Sequence record: MK308675.1 | Reading direction: 5' to 3' (one strand) | Length of the DNA: 64,000 bases | In this document: piece by piece, positions 7,412 through 61,751 of the stretch | How the letters are laid out: each line of letters begins with the position of its first letter | How positions within the stretch are numbered: the first letter of the stretch is position 1 | Made by a program: the position numbers and the translations under genes | Notes under the pieces: generated by a model | Told to the model about the DNA's origin: nothing | Seen by the model: the letters and a program-made list of their open reading frames with translations, nothing else | Databases searched by the model: none

Positions 7412-8002
7412 TTATTCTTCTTCCACAATGTCCCAAAAGAACTTTCTGTCTAAGAACGGTGTAAGAAAAACACTTACGACCGGATAACGGTAGTTCTCAA
7501 TTAGTTTAGTTTCTGGATGCTCTAGGTCGTCAAAGTCATAGTTCATGACTCTAGACCGTACGTTTAGTCCTCGCCATATATGGAGGACAAAGAAGAAGAA
7601 GAACGCATAGGTGCCCCAGATGCTGTTGTCGGCATTTGGCGGTGCGGCCGTCCCAGCCGTGCCATAGAAGCCTAGTCCCATTAAGTACGGCGTAGTGAAA
7701 TCTCTCACTTCGCCTATTTGGTAATAGTGGTACCCGGTGCGACCTACCGATACTGATTGTACGCCGAATCGAGTCTCTACTATCACATAATAATGGCAGC
7801 TACGACGAGTACACTCCTGGCCCTTATATGTAATTTTGCCGTACGTAGGGACACGAGATACCTGATAGGCATCGACCTGGACGGAGACATAAAACGCAAA
7901 GAGACACCACGCAATAACCCAGGTAACCGGGCGGTGCCAAAGAAAGCGTTTCTCTTTATTATAGATTCTAGTCTTCATCTTCATCGTCCTCAAAGTAGTC
8001 AC
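7412..8002 (-). CDS. membrane protein with two hydrophobic segments
   Basis: Hydrophobic stretches VTWVIAWCLFAFYVSV and IWGTYAFFFFFVLHIW. Confidence 0.6.
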   Translation of the reverse strand: MTTLRTMKMKTRIYNKEKRFLWHRPVTWVIAWCLFAFYVSVQVDAYQVSRVPTYGKITYKGQECTRRSCHYYVIVETRFGVQSVSVGRTGYHYYQIGEVRDFTTPYLMGLGFYGTAGTAAPPNADNSIWGTYAFFFFFVLHIWRGLNVRSRVMNYDFDDLEHPETKLIENYRYPVVSVFLTPFLDRKFFWDIVEEE

Positions 8003-8445: not shown

Positions 8446-9000
8446 CTACGGGCGTTTGTTCGGGTCGTACATGTGGTAGTCTAGGTCGTACGCCTTAGGC
8501 ATAGTCTCGATTTGTTCACCGTCTAGCTTCACAACTAGGTCTTCCATGTGCACTACGATGTTGCCTTCAATCTCAGAGAAAACACCGCGGAGCTTAAAGC
8601 TTGCAGTGACAGCTTTACCTTCGACGATTGCTTCCGAAGATAGACTATGTTTCGCTTCCAGCGAATGGCAGCGCGGTGCCTCAGAGGAAGGGGAGAACTT
8701 GAAGTTTAACTCTTTTGGTAATTGAAAGCCGATTGAGTCGAACCCGGGCAGGTTCGCTTCAAAGTAAACGCCTGTCACAAAGATGTCAGGAGAAACATAG
8801 CCCATATCGAAACTTGGTTGGCCTCGGTCTGAAAGACTCAAAAGGTCTAAGCGTCGACCGAACAGGATGGGCGCCGTTTGGAACTGCTCTTCGTCGCTAA
8901 CCTTTACGGTTTTAAGGCAAGAGGCGAATAGGTGGTCTTTATTGCGGTCGTTTAAAACGGGATACAGTTGCATTTCTTTGTCCTCAAAGTCGATTAACAT
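8446..9000 (-). CDS. free-standing protein resembling an internal domain of the phiKZ-type major capsid protein
   Basis: TAPILFGRRLDLLSLS and PKAYDLDYHMYDPNKR resemble the recalled gp120-type MCP segments TAPL..GK..DLL.LS and IIGYDL.AYRTN.NRR. Confidence 0.5.
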   Translation of the reverse strand: MLIDFEDKEMQLYPVLNDRNKDHLFASCLKTVKVSDEEQFQTAPILFGRRLDLLSLSDRGQPSFDMGYVSPDIFVTGVYFEANLPGFDSIGFQLPKELNFKFSPSSEAPRCHSLEAKHSLSSEAIVEGKAVTASFKLRGVFSEIEGNIVVHMEDLVVKLDGEQIETMPKAYDLDYHMYDPNKRP

Positions 9001-10274: not shown

Positions 10275-12096
10275 CGTACCTTCAGCCAGTTCGTTAGACT
10301 GACCCGCAGCATGACCTGCTAAGCTCTAGGGTTTCCCACTAGACGACTCACCTTCGTGAGAAGGGCATTTGACTGCCGTCGAGACTATATCATCGGTTCC
10401 TCTCAAGGACACCGCCTCATGCTTCGCCCGCACTTGCTGGGCTAGCGCTAACTTATTCCGCTATTAGGATAGCATCTGTTAGCATTAGTCGTTGAACCTG
10501 CCACAGTTTAAAGTAGCTCGGCTGCTGATTACCAATTCCATGTTCCCTTAGGAGTGTCATCGCGACAGGTCCATAGGACATCTCTTATGTTCTTTCTGTT
10601 TTCACAGCCTTTCCATCTGAACTTTCGTTCTCTGTTTCGGCCATAAGAGCTTTACGGATTTCCAGCAATTCAAAAGGTTTTACTTCGACTTAGATTTCCA
10701 GCTTCTCAATCTTTTTATGTTAATGTTAAAGCGCCCAAGCAAAGGGACGTTTTTCTTTTCAGCGTTTCTTATTGTAGACTCAGCTATGCCTATTTGCTTA
10801 GCAACTTGCTGTATGGAAGTGCCTACGTAGATTTCTTTAGTTAAGGGGTCCTCTACAGTAACGATGGCCGAAATGCGACTAGCGTCCTTCAGGATAGCGC
10901 CTTCCGCTTCTGTAAAGTCTGGCCATTCAGGTTTGTCCAAAACGGGACGAACCACGTAGCCTCGGCACGGGACATCGTCGAAGGTACTCTTCATCCTGGA
11001 AACATTCGACTCCACTGTCCCTATGTATCTGGCAGCTGCTCCGGAACTTTCAAAGATTTTTACTTCTCCGAAACTTTCCGGGCGATAGCTTTTTACCATA
11101 CAGGACGCGCACATACCAGAGCGACCAACCTGTTTTTCTAGCTCCGACGCCACCGGTACCGGCAATCCGCTGTCTTCATAGGAAAAAGCATATGTGCCCT
11201 TTTCATTTAGCTGATAGACGGCTTCTTCTGCGGCTCTTCTAGAAAGGCGGTCCACGCTATTGAAGTGCATGCCTGTGGCTTTAGCGGCCACCGTAGAGGA
11301 ACTATATATTTCCTGAGTGTTTTCTCTAACGTCAAAAACACAAACTCTTCTACCCTTCCCTTTTCTTGAGATGTTCTTTTCTTTCCCGGCGTTCTTGCTC
11401 TGAGTAAGCCATTGAAGGTTACTGAGCCCATCATTAAAGCCATCAGTATCCTTATGGTCACACTCTAAAACATCCACGTTAGCCGGATAGTCTTTAAAAG
11501 CCAGTAGTTTCGCTCTGCCTCTCCCAAGTAACAGATGTCGCCCCAAGTCGTCTAAAATACTGGCCTTCATATAACGACCATGTATGCTAAATGAATGGGT
11601 CTTTCCGGTTGCTCCATTCAGCAATAGACCTTCTTTAGACAGTCCGTATTTCGTACAGCCTGGAATCCTAAAGTAATTTGGATTTTTTCTAAGCGGCAGG
11701 GGTTTGGTAAACCCATACGTTAGATTACCTGGATGTAGATTATTACGGTCACCGTCTATGAACAATGGGCGTATTTTTCTTACTTCTTCCAGAGAAAAAG
11801 CGAAGAGTTTCTTCCATGCCCAGACCATAACTTTAGCGATGGCCACTTCCACACGGCCATTATCGCTTTTTAAGAATACGCTTTTGTTTCTTCCATTGAC
11901 TTTGCGGACACATTTTGCTTCCGTTCCGTCACTAGAATAAACATTACCCTTTTTGTCTAGCCAGAGACCATAGTTTGGAATCTCGACTCGACTAACATTA
12001 ACATAACCACTTAAACGTTCTCTTTTCATAGCTTATCTCCTCTATGATATCCGTTTTTATGGTTTATTTTGATTTAAAAAACTTACCCTTCTTTTA
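10275..12096 (-). mobile_element. group I self-splicing intron (1822 nt) in nvRNAP beta' with a homing endonuclease ORF
   Basis: The 5' exon ends in U (TTCGAT), the intron starts TAA and ends in G. Core elements on the minus strand: P AATTGCTGGAAA (10659-10670), Q AATCAGCAG (10522-10530), R GTTCAACGACTA (10486-10497), S GATATAGTC (10383-10391). Confidence 0.93.
10680..12029 (-). CDS. intron-encoded HNH homing endonuclease with NUMOD4- and NUMOD1-like modules
   Basis: Intact motif CDHKDTDGFNDGLSNLQWLTQSKN; a degenerate first copy (FIDGDRNNLHPGNL); GAGGAG RBS inside the intron. Confidence 0.9.
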   Translation of the reverse strand: MKRERLSGYVNVSRVEIPNYGLWLDKKGNVYSSDGTEAKCVRKVNGRNKSVFLKSDNGRVEVAIAKVMVWAWKKLFAFSLEEVRKIRPLFIDGDRNNLHPGNLTYGFTKPLPLRKNPNYFRIPGCTKYGLSKEGLLLNGATGKTHSFSIHGRYMKASILDDLGRHLLLGRGRAKLLAFKDYPANVDVLECDHKDTDGFNDGLSNLQWLTQSKNAGKEKNISRKGKGRRVCVFDVRENTQEIYSSSTVAAKATGMHFNSVDRLSRRAAEEAVYQLNEKGTYAFSYEDSGLPVPVASELEKQVGRSGMCASCMVKSYRPESFGEVKIFESSGAAARYIGTVESNVSRMKSTFDDVPCRGYVVRPVLDKPEWPDFTEAEGAILKDASRISAIVTVEDPLTKEIYVGTSIQQVAKQIGIAESTIRNAEKKNVPLLGRFNINIKRLRSWKSKSK

Positions 12097-18910: not shown

Positions 18911-21139
18911 TTAAATGTCTACGGATAGAGTTGAATCCTCCAACCATCTGTCTGCTTCCTCCTCGGAAATGTCGTCACTGAAGAAATGAGTGAATTTAGT
19001 ATTTGCAATGTTCATGTAAATGCCGTTACATGCCAGATAGAAAGGCTGCATTAGAGACATTAGGATTTTGCGCTCATCCATTACGGCGATGATTTCTTTC
19101 GGTATCTTTCCGCCTTGAAGCTGGTCAACCGGAGCCAGTAACTGAGTCATGGCTTTCTTATCGCGACTATACATGAATTCTTTCAATTCACTCGTAACGT
19201 TCCCATCAAGCGATTCCGCCCACTCATTAAAGTCTTTCTCTTTGCCTAACGTCACGTTGACCTTTAATGCGTCCGCTGGAGTTTGTTCAACTCTACCGTA
19301 CTTAGACCCCAAGACGATATTCCATAAGTCTTTACAGACTATCTGAGTTGCTCTGTCTTCAGCGGCGTACGTTTGAGGAGTCTTAATCTGTTCCGTTTTA
19401 AAGTACGTCGCATCACCGTCTCTCAAACGACCAAGAATACGGTGTTCTAATTTGGCCAAATAGGCGGCAGGCTCCATGGGACTAATCCCGCCCTCAATCG
19501 ACGGAGCATTAAGAAGATACCAGTAGAACTTTTCTGTTTCTCTTCTCACTGGGCTCGGCAACTTGGAGCTCTTTAACTGCACTCCTTTCACTTCTAGTTC
19601 GGATTCAGGATATACATTCCCTTCACATGCCGATATATCCATGATGTAGTGTTTTGTGACCGTTGTATTAACCTGAGCCTTAGAGTAGAACTCTGACTTC
19701 ATAGAAAGTCGGAACAGTTGGTCTTTATGAACGCCCATCTGACCGGACATGAGAGCTAAGGTATGTACGATAAGCTGAGACGTTAGGTATGATGTGATTG
19801 CGCCTGCTTGTACAGCACGGTGAGAGAAATCAATCTTACCAGTAAACCACTTAACCTGACGTTGAGTAGAGAAGATAGATGAGTCGGTATCTGAACCCAC
19901 AACCACACGACGTTTGATTGTAGGTAGAGAATGGATTGACCCTGGCATAATCTTAGTTGAGATGAACGCATCGATAAATACTTGGTACTGGTCGAACGTT
20001 TCCACAACTTGTTTGATGTAGCCAGTCCAGATAGCATACTCGTCTGGAGTTAAGTCCTTCGCTTTCTTACCTGCCATGAAGTCCGCAGATAACAGAGACG
20101 CTAGTGCCACATCATCGTCTGACGCACCGCCTGCATATTTCTTTTGTTCTTCTGGGTCAGTAAGAGGAGTAGGGCGACGACAAAGGATATCGTACAGTTG
20201 ACGAATAGCTTTATCGTTCGTTTCATGAAGTGCGTTTAAATCACCAATGAAACTAAATGCTGCACGCTCAATAGGTGTCATGTTCTCTACCATTCTGTGA
20301 ATGAGAGTTTCAGCATGCTCATCTTTCCAATATAGGCGAGATGAACTTAGGATTTGTTCGTAGACATATTCAACCGATGGCGGAGTGATGTCGAACAACA
20401 TTACGGCTTCTTCTACCTTAACAAGGTCTGCCTGCGACGTCACATAAACCATGTTCTCCATCGTCACCTCTGGGCTGAAGTAATGACGGTTAGAAGCCAT
20501 GAATTTCTCGTTACATGCGTTAGCGTATGAAGTGATAGCACGACATACAGAAGTTAATGACGTGTGAGATGAAGCGTAGTAAAGTGGGTTGTATGGCGAA
20601 CTCAGTGCACCTGAGATAGAGTTGTTACGGATTTTAAAGTTAGCCTGTAACAGGTTACAGAACGTAGCATGTTCATGGTTACCATCCATGAAAGCTGACT
20701 GGCCTTCTTTCTTAACTGCTTTACGCATCGAAAGGTTATTTGAAATGAAGCCAGATAGGAATGAATCTTCTACGTCTGGGTTACAGTAAGCGATTAAGTT
20801 AGGCGCTAGGATATGGTTCTTAGCAATTACCCAATCTAGGTAAGAAAGTAAATCAACCTTACGCTTAGTACGGTCTCCGCGTGGGGCGCGCATGAGAGAG
20901 TGTAAGTCAGGTGATTTAGGACGCCAATCGGTTAGCATCTTTTCATCGACATAGCCTGTCGTCTTTTCTAGGTCGTCGCCTGTACCTAGGTGAAGTGCCA
21001 TAGACATGGACTTCTTATAATTACCAACGATATCGTAATCACGACCGTAGTAATCTAAATCTTTTACAAAAGCGGACATTGTAGTTCTCCTTTTATCTAA
21101 CAGATTGACCGAGCCTGTAAAAAAGAAAAAACACTCCAC
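18911..21139 (-). CDS. family B DNA polymerase, polymerase-domain subunit (phiKZ gp50-like)
   Basis: FKIRNNSISG (motif B), VGSDTDSSIF (motif C) and KHY. Likely start at 21079 (MSAFVK) with AGGAG RBS. Confidence 0.9.
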   Translation of the reverse strand: MECFFFFTGSVNLLDKRRTTMSAFVKDLDYYGRDYDIVGNYKKSMSMALHLGTGDDLEKTTGYVDEKMLTDWRPKSPDLHSLMRAPRGDRTKRKVDLLSYLDWVIAKNHILAPNLIAYCNPDVEDSFLSGFISNNLSMRKAVKKEGQSAFMDGNHEHATFCNLLQANFKIRNNSISGALSSPYNPLYYASSHTSLTSVCRAITSYANACNEKFMASNRHYFSPEVTMENMVYVTSQADLVKVEEAVMLFDITPPSVEYVYEQILSSSRLYWKDEHAETLIHRMVENMTPIERAAFSFIGDLNALHETNDKAIRQLYDILCRRPTPLTDPEEQKKYAGGASDDDVALASLLSADFMAGKKAKDLTPDEYAIWTGYIKQVVETFDQYQVFIDAFISTKIMPGSIHSLPTIKRRVVVGSDTDSSIFSTQRQVKWFTGKIDFSHRAVQAGAITSYLTSQLIVHTLALMSGQMGVHKDQLFRLSMKSEFYSKAQVNTTVTKHYIMDISACEGNVYPESELEVKGVQLKSSKLPSPVRRETEKFYWYLLNAPSIEGGISPMEPAAYLAKLEHRILGRLRDGDATYFKTEQIKTPQTYAAEDRATQIVCKDLWNIVLGSKYGRVEQTPADALKVNVTLGKEKDFNEWAESLDGNVTSELKEFMYSRDKKAMTQLLAPVDQLQGGKIPKEIIAVMDERKILMSLMQPFYLACNGIYMNIANTKFTHFFSDDISEEEADRWLEDSTLSVDI

Positions 21140-35963: not shown

Positions 35964-36271
35964 TTTTAATATCCTTTTCTAGAAATAGGGCAATAATGCA
36001 CGGCCAGGCCATAAAGGCCCGCCGCGCGCGATTCTTACGTAATTGACATAACAGCTGTTAGATAGACCTATTACCTCAGGGCAATGAGAACTATCTAACC
36101 GCAGTCATGAACTATCTCGTCTCTATAGAGGGATAGATAAAGAAGACTATCTACTCCCTCTATATAGGCATAATACTAATAGACAGTATAAAGGCATGTC
36201 TCTGGGAGGATGACCCCCCTCCTGCTCCGCTAGGTTCCCCCCGTCAACATGCCTAAATGATTAGGTGAATA

Positions 36272-40269: not shown

Positions 40270-40309
40270 GATATGTTATCCTTTATTTTAATGATAGAAA
40301 TTCATAAGG

Positions 40310-40321
40310 GTAATATAGGTT
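40310..40321 (-). promoter_or_regulatory. putative early promoter
   Basis: AACCTATATTAC. Confidence 0.65.
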
Positions 40322-40474
40322 ATACTTTTACTTGAATAATATTATAGAGGGAATCATGCCTCACGCGCGGGGCATCCAATCTTTAGCCTACCTGTCTCCG
40401 GACGGGTAGGTTCCTCTACCCTATAAACAAAAAAGAATATTAACCTGCCCTCCATAAAAGGAGAGCAGGCTATT

Positions 40475-40975
40475 TTAAAACTCTATAAAGAGTACTTCGG
40501 TATCGTCGGGGAAGATGTCGCAGATGGCTGCCTCTAAGACGCCTCTGTCTTCCGTCTTAGCGCAATACTCTCTCCATGGTACGATTACCCTCCTTCCTTG
40601 ATGTAAAGCTTCAGCTGCCTTTAGAGAGCCGATTAGAGCCGATTCCCTTAGTGCGTCTCCGTCTCTCTTATTCTCTATAAAGCAGTAGAGATTATAGACG
40701 TAGAATCCAGCAGACTCTTTAGCCCAAGTGAGCATACCTAGTTTGTCCGTACTTCCTCTATGGGTGCCCTTATCAGCGATATAGGCCTTAAAGAACTTGT
40801 TACGGAATGCGGACTGGAGTATGGTGTCCCAGTTACAACCGATGTTGCAGAAGTTCAGTAAGATATCGCCGGTCTTCAAAGAGCCCATAATGGACTCGTC
40901 GCTTTCTACTATTTTAGCCATGCGAAGAATTCCGTTACTAAAGTGTAGTGATAAGAAGTAACCCAGGATGCCCAT
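40475..40975 (-). CDS. degenerate macro-domain-like (ADP-ribose-binding) protein
   Basis: ILLNFCNIG...AFRNKF...VYNLY...VIVPW follows the macro-fold layout but lacks the Gly loops. Likely start at 40921 (MAKIVES). Confidence 0.5.
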   Translation of the reverse strand: MGILGYFLSLHFSNGILRMAKIVESDESIMGSLKTGDILLNFCNIGCNWDTILQSAFRNKFFKAYIADKGTHRGSTDKLGMLTWAKESAGFYVYNLYCFIENKRDGDALRESALIGSLKAAEALHQGRRVIVPWREYCAKTEDRGVLEAAICDIFPDDTEVLFIEF

Positions 40976-41031
40976 CCGGCTAACCAGATAAGCAATAGAA
41001 CGGCTAGCGCTAAGCCTCGAATCTTATTCAT
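40909..41031 (-). CDS. 40-aa single-TM microprotein (not in ORF track)
   Basis: MNKIRGLALAVLLLIWLAGWASWVTSYHYTLVTEFFAWLK with AGGAG RBS. Confidence 0.6.
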   Translation of the reverse strand: MNKIRGLALAVLLLIWLAGWASWVTSYHYTLVTEFFAWLK

Positions 41032-41049
41032 GTCGTGTCTCCTAATAAT

Positions 41050-41495
41050 ATAGTTAACAACTCGTCACTGTTAACTTACCGTCCACAGAAAGTCGTGCTT
41101 CTGTGTATGGGTTTCTCCAAAAATGGAATGCTCACCTTTCTTCGGGAAGGTGGGCAAACCTATTTATCCTTAACCCTTTTCTCTAATACTATAGTTTAGG
41201 GCTGTGCTTTTTCACGCCGCCCCTTGAGCGTGACCCAAACGAGCCTACAATCAATGCAATAATCCCGTGCATGACTGTAATCCTAAACTGTGTGGTTTTT
41301 CCGACTAAGTTGGTTGGAATATAGACTTGGGTCTCTTATAGATAGGATAATCTGTTCGAGACCATTTTTTCTATACCTCAAAATTATTGAGGTGTCGGTG
41401 GGCTTCTGGTTGGGTGCCGACATCTCTCCCTTCGGGGAACATTAATGACAGCCAATAAAGTAAATCTCCTCAGGACGTGTCCTGAGGAGATAAAC
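41050..41495 (+). ncRNA. putative structured non-coding RNA
   Basis: About 10 consecutive stems; two cUUCGg loops and several G-U pairs work only on the plus strand; no ORF of 60 aa or more. Confidence 0.4.
41464..41491. terminator. terminator after the dead-HNH gene, possibly also ending the plus-strand RNA
   Basis: 12-bp perfect stem. Confidence 0.7.
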
Positions 41496-41508
41496 TATTT
41501 ACCGCTTA

Positions 41509-42459
41509 TTACCAGCTTTCGTCGAACGATACTTCTTCATCAGAAGATGCAGGTTCTTCGTAAGTAGGTTCAGCCGTTGGGTTTGGTGATTCACTCACTG
41601 CACCGCCAGCTTCAGGTAGTTCAGGCATGTCTGCTTCAGCAGCTGACTTAACTTGCCATGGACCTTCGCTCACCATATCTTCTAATGGTTTACGCTGATG
41701 CTTAGCTAGACGTTTCTGTGTATCGTCGCCGAACTTGTACTCAACAGCACAGACTAGGAACTCAGGGAAGTTGTTGTATAACTTCTGCTGACCTGTTTCA
41801 CTGTTACGTACTTTAACTGCTTCACGTGGGACCCAAGTGATAGTACCAGTCTCTTTATCGAACTTAAGCTCATGTGAGAAGATGCCGCCACCGAAGTCAA
41901 TGAAGTTCTCAGGAAGAGGACCCCAAGCTAGTGCCTGTAGCATTTCTTTCTTAGCCCACCAAGGAGCGTTAGCAAACGCCGGACCGTCAGCTACAAGTTT
42001 GTACATTGTGTCGCTCTCAGGCGTTACAGGCATCTTGTTGTACGCATTAAGTACACGGCCATAGCGGTCGATAACGTAACGAGTATAACCAGGAATGTAG
42101 CGGAAGTTCTCGTCGTGTTCCCAAGGGATAGGGCTAGCGAATACGAAGTAGTAATCCGAAGCTTGATATTCAGAGTTGAACTTCTTAATCATTGGGTAGT
42201 GCGGATGCGATACCGGAATACCTGCCTGACGAAGAATCATAGAAGCTTTAGGAATGTCAATGCTCTTACGTTCAGTATCGCCATCGAAAAGAATCGTGTC
42301 GTTAGAAGGCTGTTCGCCTGGGTAACGGAAGTTCTTCGGAATGTTGCGGTCCATTTTTAGAATCGATTCAAAGCGCGGATTAAGTTCGTGCTCCGGGCCG
42401 TGATGTTCACGAGGTTTAGGTTGACGCTTTTGGCCACCCCAGCCACCACCATAATTCAT
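41509..42459 (-). CDS. catalytically dead homologue of the intron HNH endonuclease
   Basis: YFVFASPIPWEHDENFRYIPGYTRYVIDRYGRVLN aligns to the intron HNH; the DH...N...N motif is absent; biased codons; acidic tail. Confidence 0.6.
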   Translation of the reverse strand: MNYGGGWGGQKRQPKPREHHGPEHELNPRFESILKMDRNIPKNFRYPGEQPSNDTILFDGDTERKSIDIPKASMILRQAGIPVSHPHYPMIKKFNSEYQASDYYFVFASPIPWEHDENFRYIPGYTRYVIDRYGRVLNAYNKMPVTPESDTMYKLVADGPAFANAPWWAKKEMLQALAWGPLPENFIDFGGGIFSHELKFDKETGTITWVPREAVKVRNSETGQQKLYNNFPEFLVCAVEYKFGDDTQKRLAKHQRKPLEDMVSEGPWQVKSAAEADMPELPEAGGAVSESPNPTAEPTYEEPASSDEEVSFDESW

Positions 42460-42544
42460 GGGGTTCTCCTTACAAAAGAAAAAAGATTTGTTGTTTGTTA
42501 ATATAGGACGGCCATAAATCCCATCCTATATTATTAATATACGG

Positions 42545-43706: not shown

Positions 43707-43719
43707 GTAATATAGGTTT
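43707..43719 (-). promoter_or_regulatory. putative early promoter
   Basis: AAACCTATATTAC. Confidence 0.65.
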
Positions 43720-55856: not shown

Positions 55857-55873
55857 GCAAAAAAAATAATGAT

Positions 55874-55904
55874 ATACTCCCCGAGCGAAATGCTCGGGGA
55901 GTAT
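55874..55904. terminator. bidirectional terminator after the tail tube gene
   Basis: ATACTCCCCGAGC/GCTCGGGGAGTAT stem. Confidence 0.75.
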
Positions 55905-55907
55905 TTG

Positions 55908-56045
55908 TTATTCTTCCTCTTCCTCGTCGTCAAGGAAGTCATCGATGTCGGAAGCCACATCCTCAGGATTTACTGGCTCTTCATCTAGGTCCAAATGGAG
56001 ACCGAACTCGTCTGCCCAGTCTCCTGAAATAGAGTCTCTAATCAT
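55908..56045 (-). CDS. 45-aa highly acidic microprotein (not in ORF track)
   Basis: MIRDSISGDWADEFGLHLDLDEEPVNPEDVASDIDDFLDDEEEEE; the start overlaps the upstream stop and the gene ends at a terminator. Confidence 0.65.
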   Translation of the reverse strand: MIRDSISGDWADEFGLHLDLDEEPVNPEDVASDIDDFLDDEEEEE

Positions 56046-57186: not shown

Positions 57187-57206
57187 GACAATATAGGTGA
57201 TAGATT
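57187..57206 (-). promoter_or_regulatory. putative early promoter, twin of the chmA promoter
   Basis: AATCTATCACCTATATTGTC, 19/20 identical to the chmA copy. Confidence 0.65.
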
Positions 57207-61704: not shown

Positions 61705-61738
61705 TGTCCTTAATGATAGAAAGTTAATTACACGAGGG

Positions 61739-61751
61739 CAATATAGGTTTT
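61739..61751 (-). promoter_or_regulatory. putative early promoter for the membrane-protein cluster
   Basis: AAAACCTATATTG. Confidence 0.6.

What the first reader, a model, noticed from the sequence alone, without database searches (positions are those of the whole stretch)
41050..41495. Hairpin-dense ~450-nt putative RNA on the plus strand, opposite all neighbouring genes and abutting a dead-HNH gene
Seen: stems at 41052/41069, 41084/41099, 41131-41154 (cUUCGg), 41191/41282 (a multibranch domain containing 41212/41228), 41299/41313, 41330/41358, 41375/41388, 41394/41415, 41427-41438 (cUUCGg) and 41464-41491. G-U pairs in at least five stems and both UUCG loops work only on the plus strand, whereas a minus-strand terminator at 21134 has UUCG on the minus strand. 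Established: HNH proteins paired with adjacent structured RNAs exist (HEARO, IscB-omegaRNA), and nuclease-dead RNA-guided derivatives are known. Inference: a new ncRNA, possibly forming an RNP with the convergent 316-aa HNH-derived protein.
Basis: partly seen in the sequence, partly recalled or inferred. Interest (0 to 1): 0.75.

Follow-up and report, generated by a model that had tools for sequence, protein, structure and literature searches.

The report
Hairpin-rich spacer in a jumbo phage
A 470-base gene-free stretch of a Vibrio jumbo phage really is packed with stem-loops, but such spacers are common in this phage group; nothing links it to the neighbouring nuclease-like protein, and the strand that is transcribed remains undecided.

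Summary
The window is Vibrio phage vB_VmeM-Yong, a 290-kb phiKZ-like phage. The stems are real: 41035-41508 folds far better than shuffles on both strands (z -7.1 plus, -5.85 minus). Other spacers of this phage and of its relatives are just as hairpin-dense.

The plus-strand call is weak:
- G-U pairs number 14 in the plus fold and 11 in the minus fold.
- Three hairpins and both UUCG loops favour plus.
- The central multibranch domain and the 41459-41496 stem favour minus. That stem is the terminator of the 316-aa gene.

The "HNH-derived" reading of the 316-aa protein holds at fold level, and the canonical catalytic His seems to be missing. That protein is conserved in 12 relatives. None of them has a detectable homologue of this sequence, so co-occurrence, and with it the RNP idea, finds no support.

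The slot downstream of this gene swaps cargo:
- Ro60 plus two YrlA Y RNAs (BONAISHI);
- Ro60 alone;
- a CCA-adding enzyme plus about 1 kb of non-coding DNA;
- nothing.

Yong has no Ro60, and the region shows no Y-RNA or tRNA-like feature. A 14-nt motif repeated at 41042-55 and 41183-96 is the conserved minus-strand start region of the downstream gene.

Best reading: a lineage-specific composite spacer. A new plus-strand RNA is not excluded (about 0.2).

The parts
41509..42459 (-). 316-aa gene. HNH-homing-endonuclease-fold protein without the canonical catalytic His and with an acidic C-terminal tail. Conserved next to the terminase block in all relatives.
   Evidence: No Pfam, PHROG, NCBIfam or PDB sequence hit. 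AF2 model pLDDT 76. Foldseek: I-HmuI and many viral HNH endonucleases. hhalign to ORF 10680-12029, which carries HNH_3/NUMOD1. Family alignment.
41459..41496 (-). Intrinsic terminator of the 316-aa gene: stem of 12-15 bp followed by TTACTTTATT on the minus strand.
   Evidence: Terminator scan. Energies -22.9 (minus) vs -21.2 (plus).
41389..41438 (.). Two hairpins. 41389-41426 has 15 pairs on plus, five of them G-U, but only about 6 bp on minus. 41427-41438 is a 4-bp cUUCGg hairpin on plus.
   Evidence: (-18.2 plus vs -9.7 minus).
41330..41371 (+). Hairpin of 12 pairs with a 2x2 internal loop, followed by ATTTTTT on the plus strand only. It looks like a plus-strand intrinsic terminator. It is the main positional hint of plus-strand transcription, and it could arise by chance.
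   Evidence: Sequence. Energies -14.3 plus vs -11.5 minus. Not picked up by the simple scan because of the internal loop.
41299..41319 (.). 9-bp hairpin with two G-U pairs; plus favoured.
   Evidence: -8.3 vs -2.2.
41187..41294 (.). 108-nt three-way multibranch domain: a closing stem plus hairpins 41212-33 and 41246-79. It folds better on the minus strand.
   Evidence: (-30.2 plus vs -34.9 minus).
41183..41196 (-). Copy b of the 14-nt motif AACTATAGTATTAG, which contains the 8-bp palindrome ACTATAGT. Identical to L005 6379-6392, which lies on that locus's gene-sense strand.
41129..41156 (.). 12-bp hairpin with a cUUCGg loop and two G-U pairs on plus. On minus it is weaker but is followed by TTCCATTTTT.
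   Evidence: (-17.4 vs -10.0).
41052..41110 (.). Palindromic hairpin 41052-41076 and hairpin 41079-41110.
41042..41055 (-). Copy a of the motif (AACTATATTATTAG), 10 nt upstream of the ATG of the 40-aa ORF and overlapping its AGGAG ribosome-binding site. Relatives have the same motif (RACTATAGAATTGG) 20-24 nt upstream of the ATG of the 148/151/156-aa gene.
   Evidence: Weak match to the phage promoter core.
40909..41031 (-). 40-aa hydrophobic (single-TM-like) ORF, annotated in GenBank. No homologue in any relative. It overlaps the start of the 148-aa gene.
   Evidence: (no tblastn hit).
40475..40921 (-). 148-aa gene with a weak PHROG 'phosphatase' hit. It is the orthologue of the gene that follows the slot in L002, L003, L016 and L017.

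Best explanation
The 41035-41508 stretch is most likely a lineage-specific, composite non-coding spacer. It sits at a cargo-exchange hot spot just downstream of a conserved gene block (terminase ... HNH-derived gene).

Its parts, read on the gene (minus) strand:
1. The intrinsic terminator of the 316-aa gene (41496-41459).
2. About 260 nt of orphan stem-loops (41458-41197).
3. A duplicated copy of the conserved start-region motif of the downstream gene (41196-41183).
4. A 126-nt hairpin-containing segment that would serve as leader (41182-41056).
5. The second motif copy with the ribosome-binding site of a Yong-specific 40-aa membrane-peptide ORF, which overlaps the 148-aa gene.

Stem-loops of this kind (terminators and transcript-end or leader structures) fill the spacers of this phage group generally. 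Here an unusually long run has accumulated, probably through insertion, duplication or deletion at the slot.

Shown: the structure, the terminator, the duplicated motif and its conservation in relatives, the variable slot content, and the absence of any homologue of the sequence.

Inferred: that the hairpins act in cis on minus-strand transcripts (termination, attenuation, stability) rather than forming one dedicated plus-strand ribonucleoprotein RNA.
For: - Identity and context: the window is phage Yong, and all neighbouring genes are on the minus strand.
- Terminator at 41491-41464 on minus.
- Hairpin density is generic. Other window spacers reach z -5 to -7. The equivalent gaps in L002, L003, L005, L007, L010, L016 and L017 reach z -3 to -7.6 on both strands. 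Ro60-flanking gaps in pir03, sm033 and L008 reach z -3.5 to -7 on at least one strand.
- Slot variability.
  - L016 and L017 have the 148-aa orthologue directly after the HNH-like gene, with gaps of 240 and 154 nt.
  - L002 and L003 insert a CCA-adding enzyme plus about 1 kb of non-coding DNA.
  - L008, pir03, C-ZP2022, sm033 and BONAISHI insert Ro60 on the opposite strand.
  - L005, L007 and L010 have yet other neighbours.
- No sequence homologue of the region anywhere:
  - the phage database finds only the four identical Yong genomes, one place each;
  - nothing in any fetched locus;
  - nothing elsewhere in the window;
  - nothing in IMG/VR for the 20-mer tried.
- The motif AACTATAG/TTATTAG occurs only twice in 64 kb, both times here and both on minus. 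It matches the conserved sequence 20-24 nt before the ATG of the downstream gene in L002, L016 and L017, and is identical in L005.
- No strand preference at the global level.
Against: - Three hairpins are much more stable on the plus strand, and both UUCG tetraloops read UUCG only on plus. Long-stem UUCG hairpins elsewhere in the window read UUCG on the minus strand, the strand of nearly all genes there.
- The hairpin at 41330-41363 has its T-run on the plus strand.
- G+C content (0.43) is closer to coding DNA than to the AT-rich spacers of this phage.
- 474 nt is long for a purely passive spacer in a densely packed phage genome.
- No expression data exist.
- The phage's one recognisable promoter class has no site on either strand here, so the transcripts that cross the region are unknown.
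Confidence: 0.5

Rival explanations
1. One or two independent plus-strand non-coding RNAs of roughly 41056-41371, about 130-320 nt, ending at the 41330-41371 terminator-like hairpin. They could be either of two things:
- a cis-antisense regulator of the leader of the 40-aa/148-aa operon;
- a cargo RNA filling the slot and strand where relatives keep their Ro60/Y-RNA unit.
For: - Plus z-score of -7.1 to -8.0 against -4.5 to -5.9 for minus.
- Three strongly plus-favoured hairpins, enriched against the rest of the window (3 of 8 vs 2 of 67).
- UUCG loops oriented for plus.
- A T6 run after the 41330-63 hairpin on plus only.
- In BONAISHI two YrlA RNAs and Ro60 lie in the same slot on the strand opposite to the HNH-like gene. 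pir03, sm033 and L008 also have an opposite-strand unit there.
- In L005 all three terminator-like hairpins of the equivalent 454-nt gap have their T-runs on the opposite strand.
Against: - No promoter was identified on plus.
- The global strand asymmetry is under one SD, and G-U counts are 14 vs 11.
- The central 108-nt domain prefers minus.
- The plus strand is T-rich here, which by itself favours G-U pairing.
- No homologue exists, so there is no covariation evidence.
- The repeated motif in the left part reads as a sense-strand element.
- With about 10 hairpins and two sides each, one chance T-run is expected.
Confidence: 0.25
2. A long structured minus-strand leader or attenuator for the 40-aa membrane peptide and the 148-aa gene. 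This could include a type-I-toxin-like arrangement: a small hydrophobic peptide, a folded 5' UTR and an antisense RNA.
For: - Two sense-strand copies of the conserved gene-start motif.
- On minus, the 41156-41129 hairpin is followed by TTCCATTTTT, which is attenuator-like.
- The 40-aa ORF is hydrophobic, Yong-specific, and has a strong AGGAG ribosome-binding site.
- The minus fold has z -5.85.
Against: - No promoter was recognised.
- No family hit for the peptide in Pfam, NCBIfam or PADLOC.
- The ribosome-binding site is unpaired in the predicted minus fold.
- The 41129-56 hairpin has two A.C mismatches on minus.
- The peptide ORF overlaps the 148-aa gene, which argues for an ordinary operon.
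Confidence: 0.17
3. One reading: a plus-strand guide or scaffold RNA that forms a ribonucleoprotein with the convergent nuclease-dead HNH-derived 316-aa protein, analogous to HEARO/IscB-omega RNA.
For: The protein is HNH-fold-derived and apparently inactive. The structured region abuts its 3' end.
Against: - The protein is conserved in 12 relatives, and none of them has a homologous sequence next to it. In L002 and L003 a CCA-adding enzyme gene starts 56 nt after its stop, and in L007 and L010 the gap is under 130 nt.
- No Rfam HEARO or related hit at E 10.
- No RuvC or other IscB/TnpB domain, and no transposon ends.
- The geometry is convergent rather than same-strand.
- The part that abuts the gene is its own terminator.
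Confidence: 0.03
4. A decayed remnant of a Ro60/Y-RNA (or CCA-enzyme/tRNA-like) cassette: leftover Y-RNA-like or UTR hairpins after loss of the protein gene.
For: - Same slot and same strand as the Ro60 + YrlA unit in BONAISHI.
- Yong lacks Ro60 altogether.
- G+C content is like coding or RNA-gene sequence.
Against: - No YrlA or tRNA match at E 10.
- No T-arm or D-arm sequence and no GNCGAAN0-1G motif inside the region (motif definition from PMC4201824).
- No tblastn trace of Ro60 or the CCA enzyme in the region (Ro60 and CCA proteins against the relatives' loci).
- The closest relatives (L002, L003, L005) do not carry Ro60.
Confidence: 0.05

Closest known systems
Hairpin-rich intergenic spacers of phages: intrinsic terminators and promoter/stem-loop cassettes at hyperplastic regions. 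The comparison with T4-type 'PeSL' cassettes rests on my own knowledge and was not tested here.
   Same: A non-coding stretch between same-strand genes at a position where gene content differs between relatives. It contains a bona fide terminator, several unrelated stem-loops and a short repeated motif at the gene-start border.
   Different: It is unusually long (474 nt). Its G+C content is near coding level. It holds a cluster of hairpins more stable on the antisense strand. The phage's main promoter motif is absent.
Bacterial and phage Y RNAs (YrlA, Rfam RF02553) with Ro60
   Same: It occupies the same genomic slot, and (if plus-stranded) the same strand, as the Ro60 + two YrlA unit of Vibrio phage BONAISHI. 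It has a multibranch domain of about 110 nt closed by a long stem.
   Different: There is no Ro60 gene in Yong. There is no tRNA-like T or D arm, no GNCGAA motif and no Rfam score.
HEARO / IscB omega RNA (HNH-associated structured RNAs)
   Same: A structured non-coding region lies beside a gene for an HNH-fold protein.
   Different: - No Rfam hit.
- The protein lacks RuvC and the HNH catalytic motif.
- The RNA would be convergent, not co-directional.
- There are no mobile-element ends.
- Protein and RNA do not co-occur in relatives.
I-HmuI-type HNH homing endonucleases (NUMOD4 + HNH_3), for the 316-aa protein
   Same: Fold-level match to 1u3e and to many phage and giant-virus HNH endonucleases. 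NUMOD4-like W...IPGYTRYVID..GRVLNA segment. Profile match to the window's own HNH_3/NUMOD1 ORF.
   Different: - No Pfam HNH hit.
- The His of the H-x-D-G motif is replaced by an invariant Phe (inference from the alignment).
- It sits at a fixed syntenic position in all relatives, so it is domesticated rather than mobile.
- It has an acidic C-terminal tail.

Membership tests
Any Rfam 15 family (including HEARO, group I/II introns, YrlA, tRNA, GOLLD/ROOL, riboswitches) | Covariance-model score at or near the family's gathering threshold | tested here: not met
   No hit in the region at gathering thresholds. At E up to 10 over 40800-41700 only chance-level miRNA, snoRNA and potC matches of 14-21 bits appear, mostly on the terminator hairpin.
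YrlA / bacterial Y RNA | tRNA-like domain (T arm GGUUCRAnYCC, D arm AGCUCAGUUGGUAGAGC) | tested here: not met
   The regex and Rfam scans find none in 41035-41508 on either strand. The BONAISHI control shows both arms twice.
YrlA / bacterial Y RNA | Ro60-binding motif GNCGAAN0-1G near the 5' end (PMC4201824) | tested here: not met
   There are no matches inside the region. The only matches lie inside the 316-aa coding sequence, at 41521/41523.
YrlA / bacterial Y RNA | Encoded within about 4 kb of a Ro60 (TROVE) gene on the same strand (PMC4201824) | tested here: not met
   tblastn with the pir03 and BONAISHI Ro60 proteins finds the four other Vibrio jumbo phages but none of the four Yong genomes. 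There is also no hit in the window.
IscB/omega-RNA or HEARO-type RNP | Protein with RuvC plus an active HNH domain, and an RNA gene adjacent on the same strand inside a mobile element | tested here: not met
   The 316-aa protein has no Pfam domain. Its fold matches homing-endonuclease HNH, not IscB. The geometry is convergent, and the locus is syntenic rather than mobile.
IscB/omega-RNA or HEARO-type RNP | Co-occurrence and co-variation of the RNA with the protein across homologues | tested here: not met
   12 homologous loci were examined, and none has sequence similar to the region. The downstream content differs in each lineage.
Rho-independent terminator (element 41459-41496) | G+C-rich stem-loop followed by a T-run, downstream of a gene on the same strand | tested here: met
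   12-bp stem, 4-nt loop, tail TTACTTTATT on minus, 13 nt after the stop codon of the 316-aa gene.
HNH endonuclease (protein 41509-42459) | I-HmuI-like fold (N-terminal beta-hairpin / NUMOD4 region plus beta-beta-alpha region) | tested here: met
   Foldseek: 1u3e at E 8e-3, prob 0.89; BFVD HNH endonucleases at E 1e-9 to 1e-4. hhalign to the HNH_3 ORF at E 3e-5.
HNH endonuclease (protein 41509-42459) | Catalytic His-Asn-His/Asn motif | tested here: inconclusive
   - No HNH Pfam match in any of 13 members.
- The expected 'N-H-x-D-G' reads N-F-I-D-F-G, with an invariant Phe.
- Positional equivalence is inferred. No residue-level alignment to a solved HNH could be obtained.
Type I toxin-antitoxin | Small hydrophobic toxin ORF plus an antisense RNA that overlaps its mRNA | not testable with these tools
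   A 40-aa hydrophobic ORF is present. No family hit was found. An antisense transcript cannot be shown from sequence alone.

The most novel reading that the evidence does not exclude
Yong may carry one or two previously undescribed plus-strand structured RNAs (about 41056-41371, possibly up to 41440). They would be transcribed against the flow of the surrounding genes, in the genomic slot where related Vibrio jumbo phages keep RNA-metabolism cargo (Ro60 with Y RNAs, or a CCA-adding enzyme). That would make it an orphan phage ncRNA that acts without a phage-encoded Ro60. It might regulate the adjacent membrane-peptide/148-aa operon by antisense pairing, or engage host RNA-surveillance factors.
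Probability: 0.2. Interest if true: 0.6.

Novelty: new member of a known kind. Interest (0 to 1): 0.3.

Why it matters
As it stands this is mainly a calibration result. In phiKZ-like Vibrio jumbo phages, intergenic DNA is so rich in stable stem-loops that a z-score of -7 and a list of hairpins do not by themselves mark an RNA gene. G-U counting on one strand is not a strand test either.

The useful biology lies in the context:
- The position just after a domesticated, apparently inactive HNH-fold gene is a cargo-exchange slot. Different lineages load it with RNA-metabolism functions: Ro60 plus tRNA-like Y RNAs, or a CCA-adding enzyme with about 1 kb of conserved non-coding DNA.
- If the Yong spacer does encode a plus-strand RNA, it would be a new RNA cargo at that slot and a handle on how jumbo phages manipulate RNA quality control.

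Tried and rejected
1. Rfam at gathering and at E 10 found nothing in the region. ARAGORN found no tRNA or tmRNA in the window or in relatives.
2. Homologues of the region were sought six ways, and none was found:
   - blastn against 50,697 phage records found only Yong itself;
   - blastn, nhmmer and Smith-Waterman with shuffle controls against all fetched loci;
   - a self-search of the window;
   - an IMG/VR scan for the exact 20-mer;
   - protein-anchored scans of viral and metagenome contigs;
   - the nearest relative of the flanking protein among 5.8 billion proteins is 59% identical, so covariation analysis is impossible.
3. A covariance model was built from the conserved L002/L003 block upstream of the 151-aa gene, which has a hairpin with two compensatory changes. 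It gave no hit in the region, only terminator-like hairpins elsewhere.
4. Pseudogene test: tblastn of 12 slot proteins, including a Ro60 and a CCA enzyme, against the window gave nothing in the region.
5. Y-RNA hypothesis: rejected on four defining features.
6. The phage promoter motif ACCTATATTRC was derived from the window and has 12 strong sites, all on minus. None lies in the region on either strand.
7. I briefly read the repeat CTAATAnTATAG as a plus-strand promoter shared with the Ro60 upstream regions of L008, pir03 and BONAISHI. I rejected this in favour of the sense-strand reading once the same motif turned up 20-24 nt before the ATG of the downstream gene in L002, L016 and L017.
8. 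Group-I-intron analogy with the HNH ORF + intron pair at 10362-12029: no Rfam score and no similarity.
9. Short ORFs in the region (23-54 aa): no family hits, and for those I inspected by eye no convincing ribosome-binding site.
Full report
**Identity and setting**

The window is 100% identical to Vibrio phage vB_VmeM-Yong XC31 (MK308674, 290.5 kb; window position = record position - 62000) and to three sister isolates. The phage is phiKZ-like: relatives carry phiKZ gp29 and VTX domains. GenBank annotates nothing between the 316-aa gene (41509-42459, minus) and a 40-aa ORF (40909-41031, minus) that overlaps a 148-aa gene (40475-40921, minus). All neighbours are on the minus strand.

Yes for the stems.
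- The plus strand of 41035-41508 folds to -155.1 kcal/mol, z -7.12.
- The minus strand folds to -148.8 kcal/mol, z -5.85.
- No shuffle does as well on either strand.
- The region has no ORF above 54 aa and no family hit for its short ORFs.
- It has no tRNA and no Rfam family, even at E 10.

**Is it unusual?**

Only partly. I called ORFs across the window and folded all 20 gaps of at least 120 nt. This gap is the most structured on plus. However, 35964-36271, 55857-56037 and 40270-40474 reach z -5 to -7 as well. The positionally equivalent gaps of eight related loci are all at z -3 to -7.6 on both strands, and most of the Ro60-flanking gaps of pir03, sm033 and L008 fold similarly well. Hairpin-dense spacers are a property of this phage group.

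**Strand**

- The plus fold has 14 G-U pairs and the minus fold has 11.
- Each fold contains A.C mismatches that are G-U on the other strand.
- After subtracting shuffle means, the strands differ by about 4 kcal/mol, less than one SD.

Locally the picture is mixed.
- Plus favoured: 41129-56 (12 bp, cUUCGg, -17.4 vs -10.0), 41299-319 (-8.3 vs -2.2) and 41389-426 (-18.2 vs -9.7).
- Minus favoured: the 108-nt multibranch domain 41187-41294 (-30.2 vs -34.9) and 41246-79.
- The 41459-96 stem is the minus-strand intrinsic terminator of the 316-aa gene, with a T-run on minus only.

- Strongly plus-favoured hairpins are enriched here: 3 of 8 against 2 of 67 in the other gaps.
- The only long-stem UUCG hairpin on the window's plus strand is here; the other four are on the minus strand.
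- The 41330-63 hairpin is followed by T6 on plus only.

Three points count against:
- The plus strand is T-rich here.
- One chance T-run among about 20 hairpin flanks is expected.
- No promoter is recognisable on plus. I derived the phage's promoter motif (ACCTATATTRC, with an upstream TCAAgtAA and a downstream ATG). It has 12 strong sites, all on minus and all intergenic, and none in this region on either strand.

**The neighbouring protein**

It has no Pfam, PHROG, NCBIfam or PDB sequence hit. An AlphaFold model built from 10 homologues has pLDDT 76 and pTM 0.72.
- In the PDB the model matches I-HmuI best (1u3e, E 8e-3, prob 0.89). This match is weak: no PDB hit reaches E 0.001, and the TM-scores are low.
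- In BFVD it matches dozens of HNH homing endonucleases, including Goslar, PA7 and phiKZ gp056.
- A profile of the family hits the window's own HNH_3/NUMOD1 ORF at 10680-12029 (E 3e-5).

So "HNH-derived" is right. No member matches an HNH model. Where HNH_3 enzymes have N-H-x-D-G, the family reads N-F-I-D-F-G with an invariant Phe. "Dead" is therefore a reasonable inference, but it was not shown residue by residue (one search gave no alignment). The family ends in an acidic D-[FI]-[DE]-F tail.

**Comparative context**

This is the decisive part. The protein has 9 homologues among 5.8 billion proteins, at 34-59% identity, and 4 in isolated Vibrio jumbo phages, at about 36%. I fetched their loci.

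The upstream block is conserved everywhere: terminase, an opposite-strand gene of about 400 aa, then genes of 255 aa and 119 aa, then the HNH-like gene. The sequence after the HNH-like gene differs in every lineage:

| Loci | What follows the HNH-like gene |
|---|---|
| L016, L017 | The 148-aa orthologue after 240 and 154 nt |
| L002, L003 | A CCA-adding enzyme and about 1 kb of conserved non-coding DNA, then the 151-aa orthologue |
| L005 | A 454-nt gap, then a different gene |
| L007, L010 | Gaps under 130 nt |
| L008, pir03, C-ZP2022, sm033, BONAISHI | A Ro60 (TROVE) gene on the opposite strand |

In BONAISHI, Rfam detects two YrlA Y RNAs upstream of Ro60 on that strand (59.3 and 35.8 bits, E 4e-11 and 2e-4). 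That fits the rule that YrlA lies within 4 kb of Ro60 on the same strand (PMC4201824).

None of these loci has any sequence similar to 41035-41508. The protein therefore does not co-occur with this RNA, and the RNP hypothesis loses its only comparative test.

**Is it a Y RNA, or a relic of one?**

The slot and the putative strand fit, so I tested the defining features:
- Yong has no Ro60.
- The region has no T or D arm, no GNCGAAN0-1G motif and no YrlA or tRNA score.
- There is no tblastn trace of Ro60 or the CCA enzyme.

It is not a member.

**The repeated motif**

The only repeat in the region is a 14-mer, read on minus as AACTATATTATTAG (41055-41042) and AACTATAGTATTAG (41196-41183).
- It occurs nowhere else in the 64 kb at one mismatch or fewer.
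- It is identical in L005, on that locus's gene-sense strand.
- Aligning the sense-strand sequence upstream of the first gene after the slot shows the same motif 20-24 nt before the ATG of the 148/151/156-aa gene: L002 AACTATAGAATTGG, L016 GACTATAGAATTGA, L017 GACTATATGATTGG.

It is therefore the conserved start region of the downstream gene, read on the gene strand. In Yong it is duplicated 141 nt apart. The proximal copy now serves a Yong-specific 40-aa hydrophobic ORF that has no homologue in relatives. This points to insertion or duplication at the slot border, and it gives the left third of the region a minus-strand reading.

**Conclusion**

The best-supported account (confidence about 0.5) is a lineage-specific composite spacer at a cargo-exchange hot spot. 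It consists of a terminator, orphan stem-loops, a duplicated gene-start motif, a hairpin-containing leader, and then the small ORF.

| Reading | Confidence |
|---|---|
| Composite spacer (best explanation) | about 0.5 |
| Dedicated plus-strand ncRNA | about 0.25 |
| Minus-strand leader or type-I-toxin-like module | about 0.17 |
| Decayed Ro60/Y-RNA cassette | about 0.05 |
| RNP with the HNH-derived protein | about 0.03 |

Only transcript mapping or closer relatives can decide. Neither exists in the collections searched: the sole paper that mentions Yong (PMC7765460) has no transcript data.

Noticed in passing
window 10362-12029 (minus), and 8446-9000: A group I intron (Rfam 53.8 bits, E 7e-11) lies directly downstream of, and overlaps the end of, a 449-aa ORF with HNH_3 and NUMOD1 domains. 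The nearby 184-aa ORF has a weak PhiKZ major-capsid-protein match. The capsid-gene region may therefore be split by an intron/homing-endonuclease unit. GenBank annotates none of this.
   Followed up: partly
window, 12 sites (e.g. 40310-40320, 43707-43717, 57188-57198, 61738-61748), all on the minus strand: A phage promoter-like motif: TCAAgtAA-N6-ACCTATATTRC-N5-7-ATG. It lies 35-50 nt upstream of gene starts. There is a clean score gap between the 12 sites and background. Its core is conserved in pir03, sm033, L008 and BONAISHI.
   Followed up: partly
window 35964-36271 (minus): A second long hairpin-dense spacer: five or six stem-loops in 308 nt, z -5.8 to -7.2 on the gene strand, with no Rfam hit.
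   Followed up: partly
L012 (Vibrio phage BONAISHI MH595538) 7465-7576 and 7659-7778, minus strand of the locus: Two unannotated YrlA-type tRNA-like Y RNAs lie upstream of the annotated 'RNA binding protein' (Ro60). pir03, C-ZP2022, sm033 and L008 have Ro60 but no Rfam-detectable YrlA. The pir03/C-ZP2022 leader has a GAGA-loop hairpin with a compensatory change.
   Followed up: partly
L002 6017-8266 and L003 6007-8443: A phage CCA-adding enzyme (PolyA_pol + HD) is followed by about 1 kb of non-coding DNA. That DNA has an AT-rich conserved block and a conserved 130-nt block of three hairpins, one of them with two compensatory substitutions between L002 and L003. No Rfam or tRNA hit.
   Followed up: partly
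window 41509-41560 (C-terminus of the 316-aa protein) and homologues: All family members end in a disordered acidic tail that finishes with D-[FI]-[DE/P]-F. From my own knowledge this resembles the partner-binding tip of bacterial SSB. Not tested.
   Followed up: no
window 42498-42534: An inverted pair of promoter-core-like sequences (TCCTATATTAA on minus, TCCTATATTAT on plus) forms a hairpin just upstream of the 316-aa gene.
   Followed up: no
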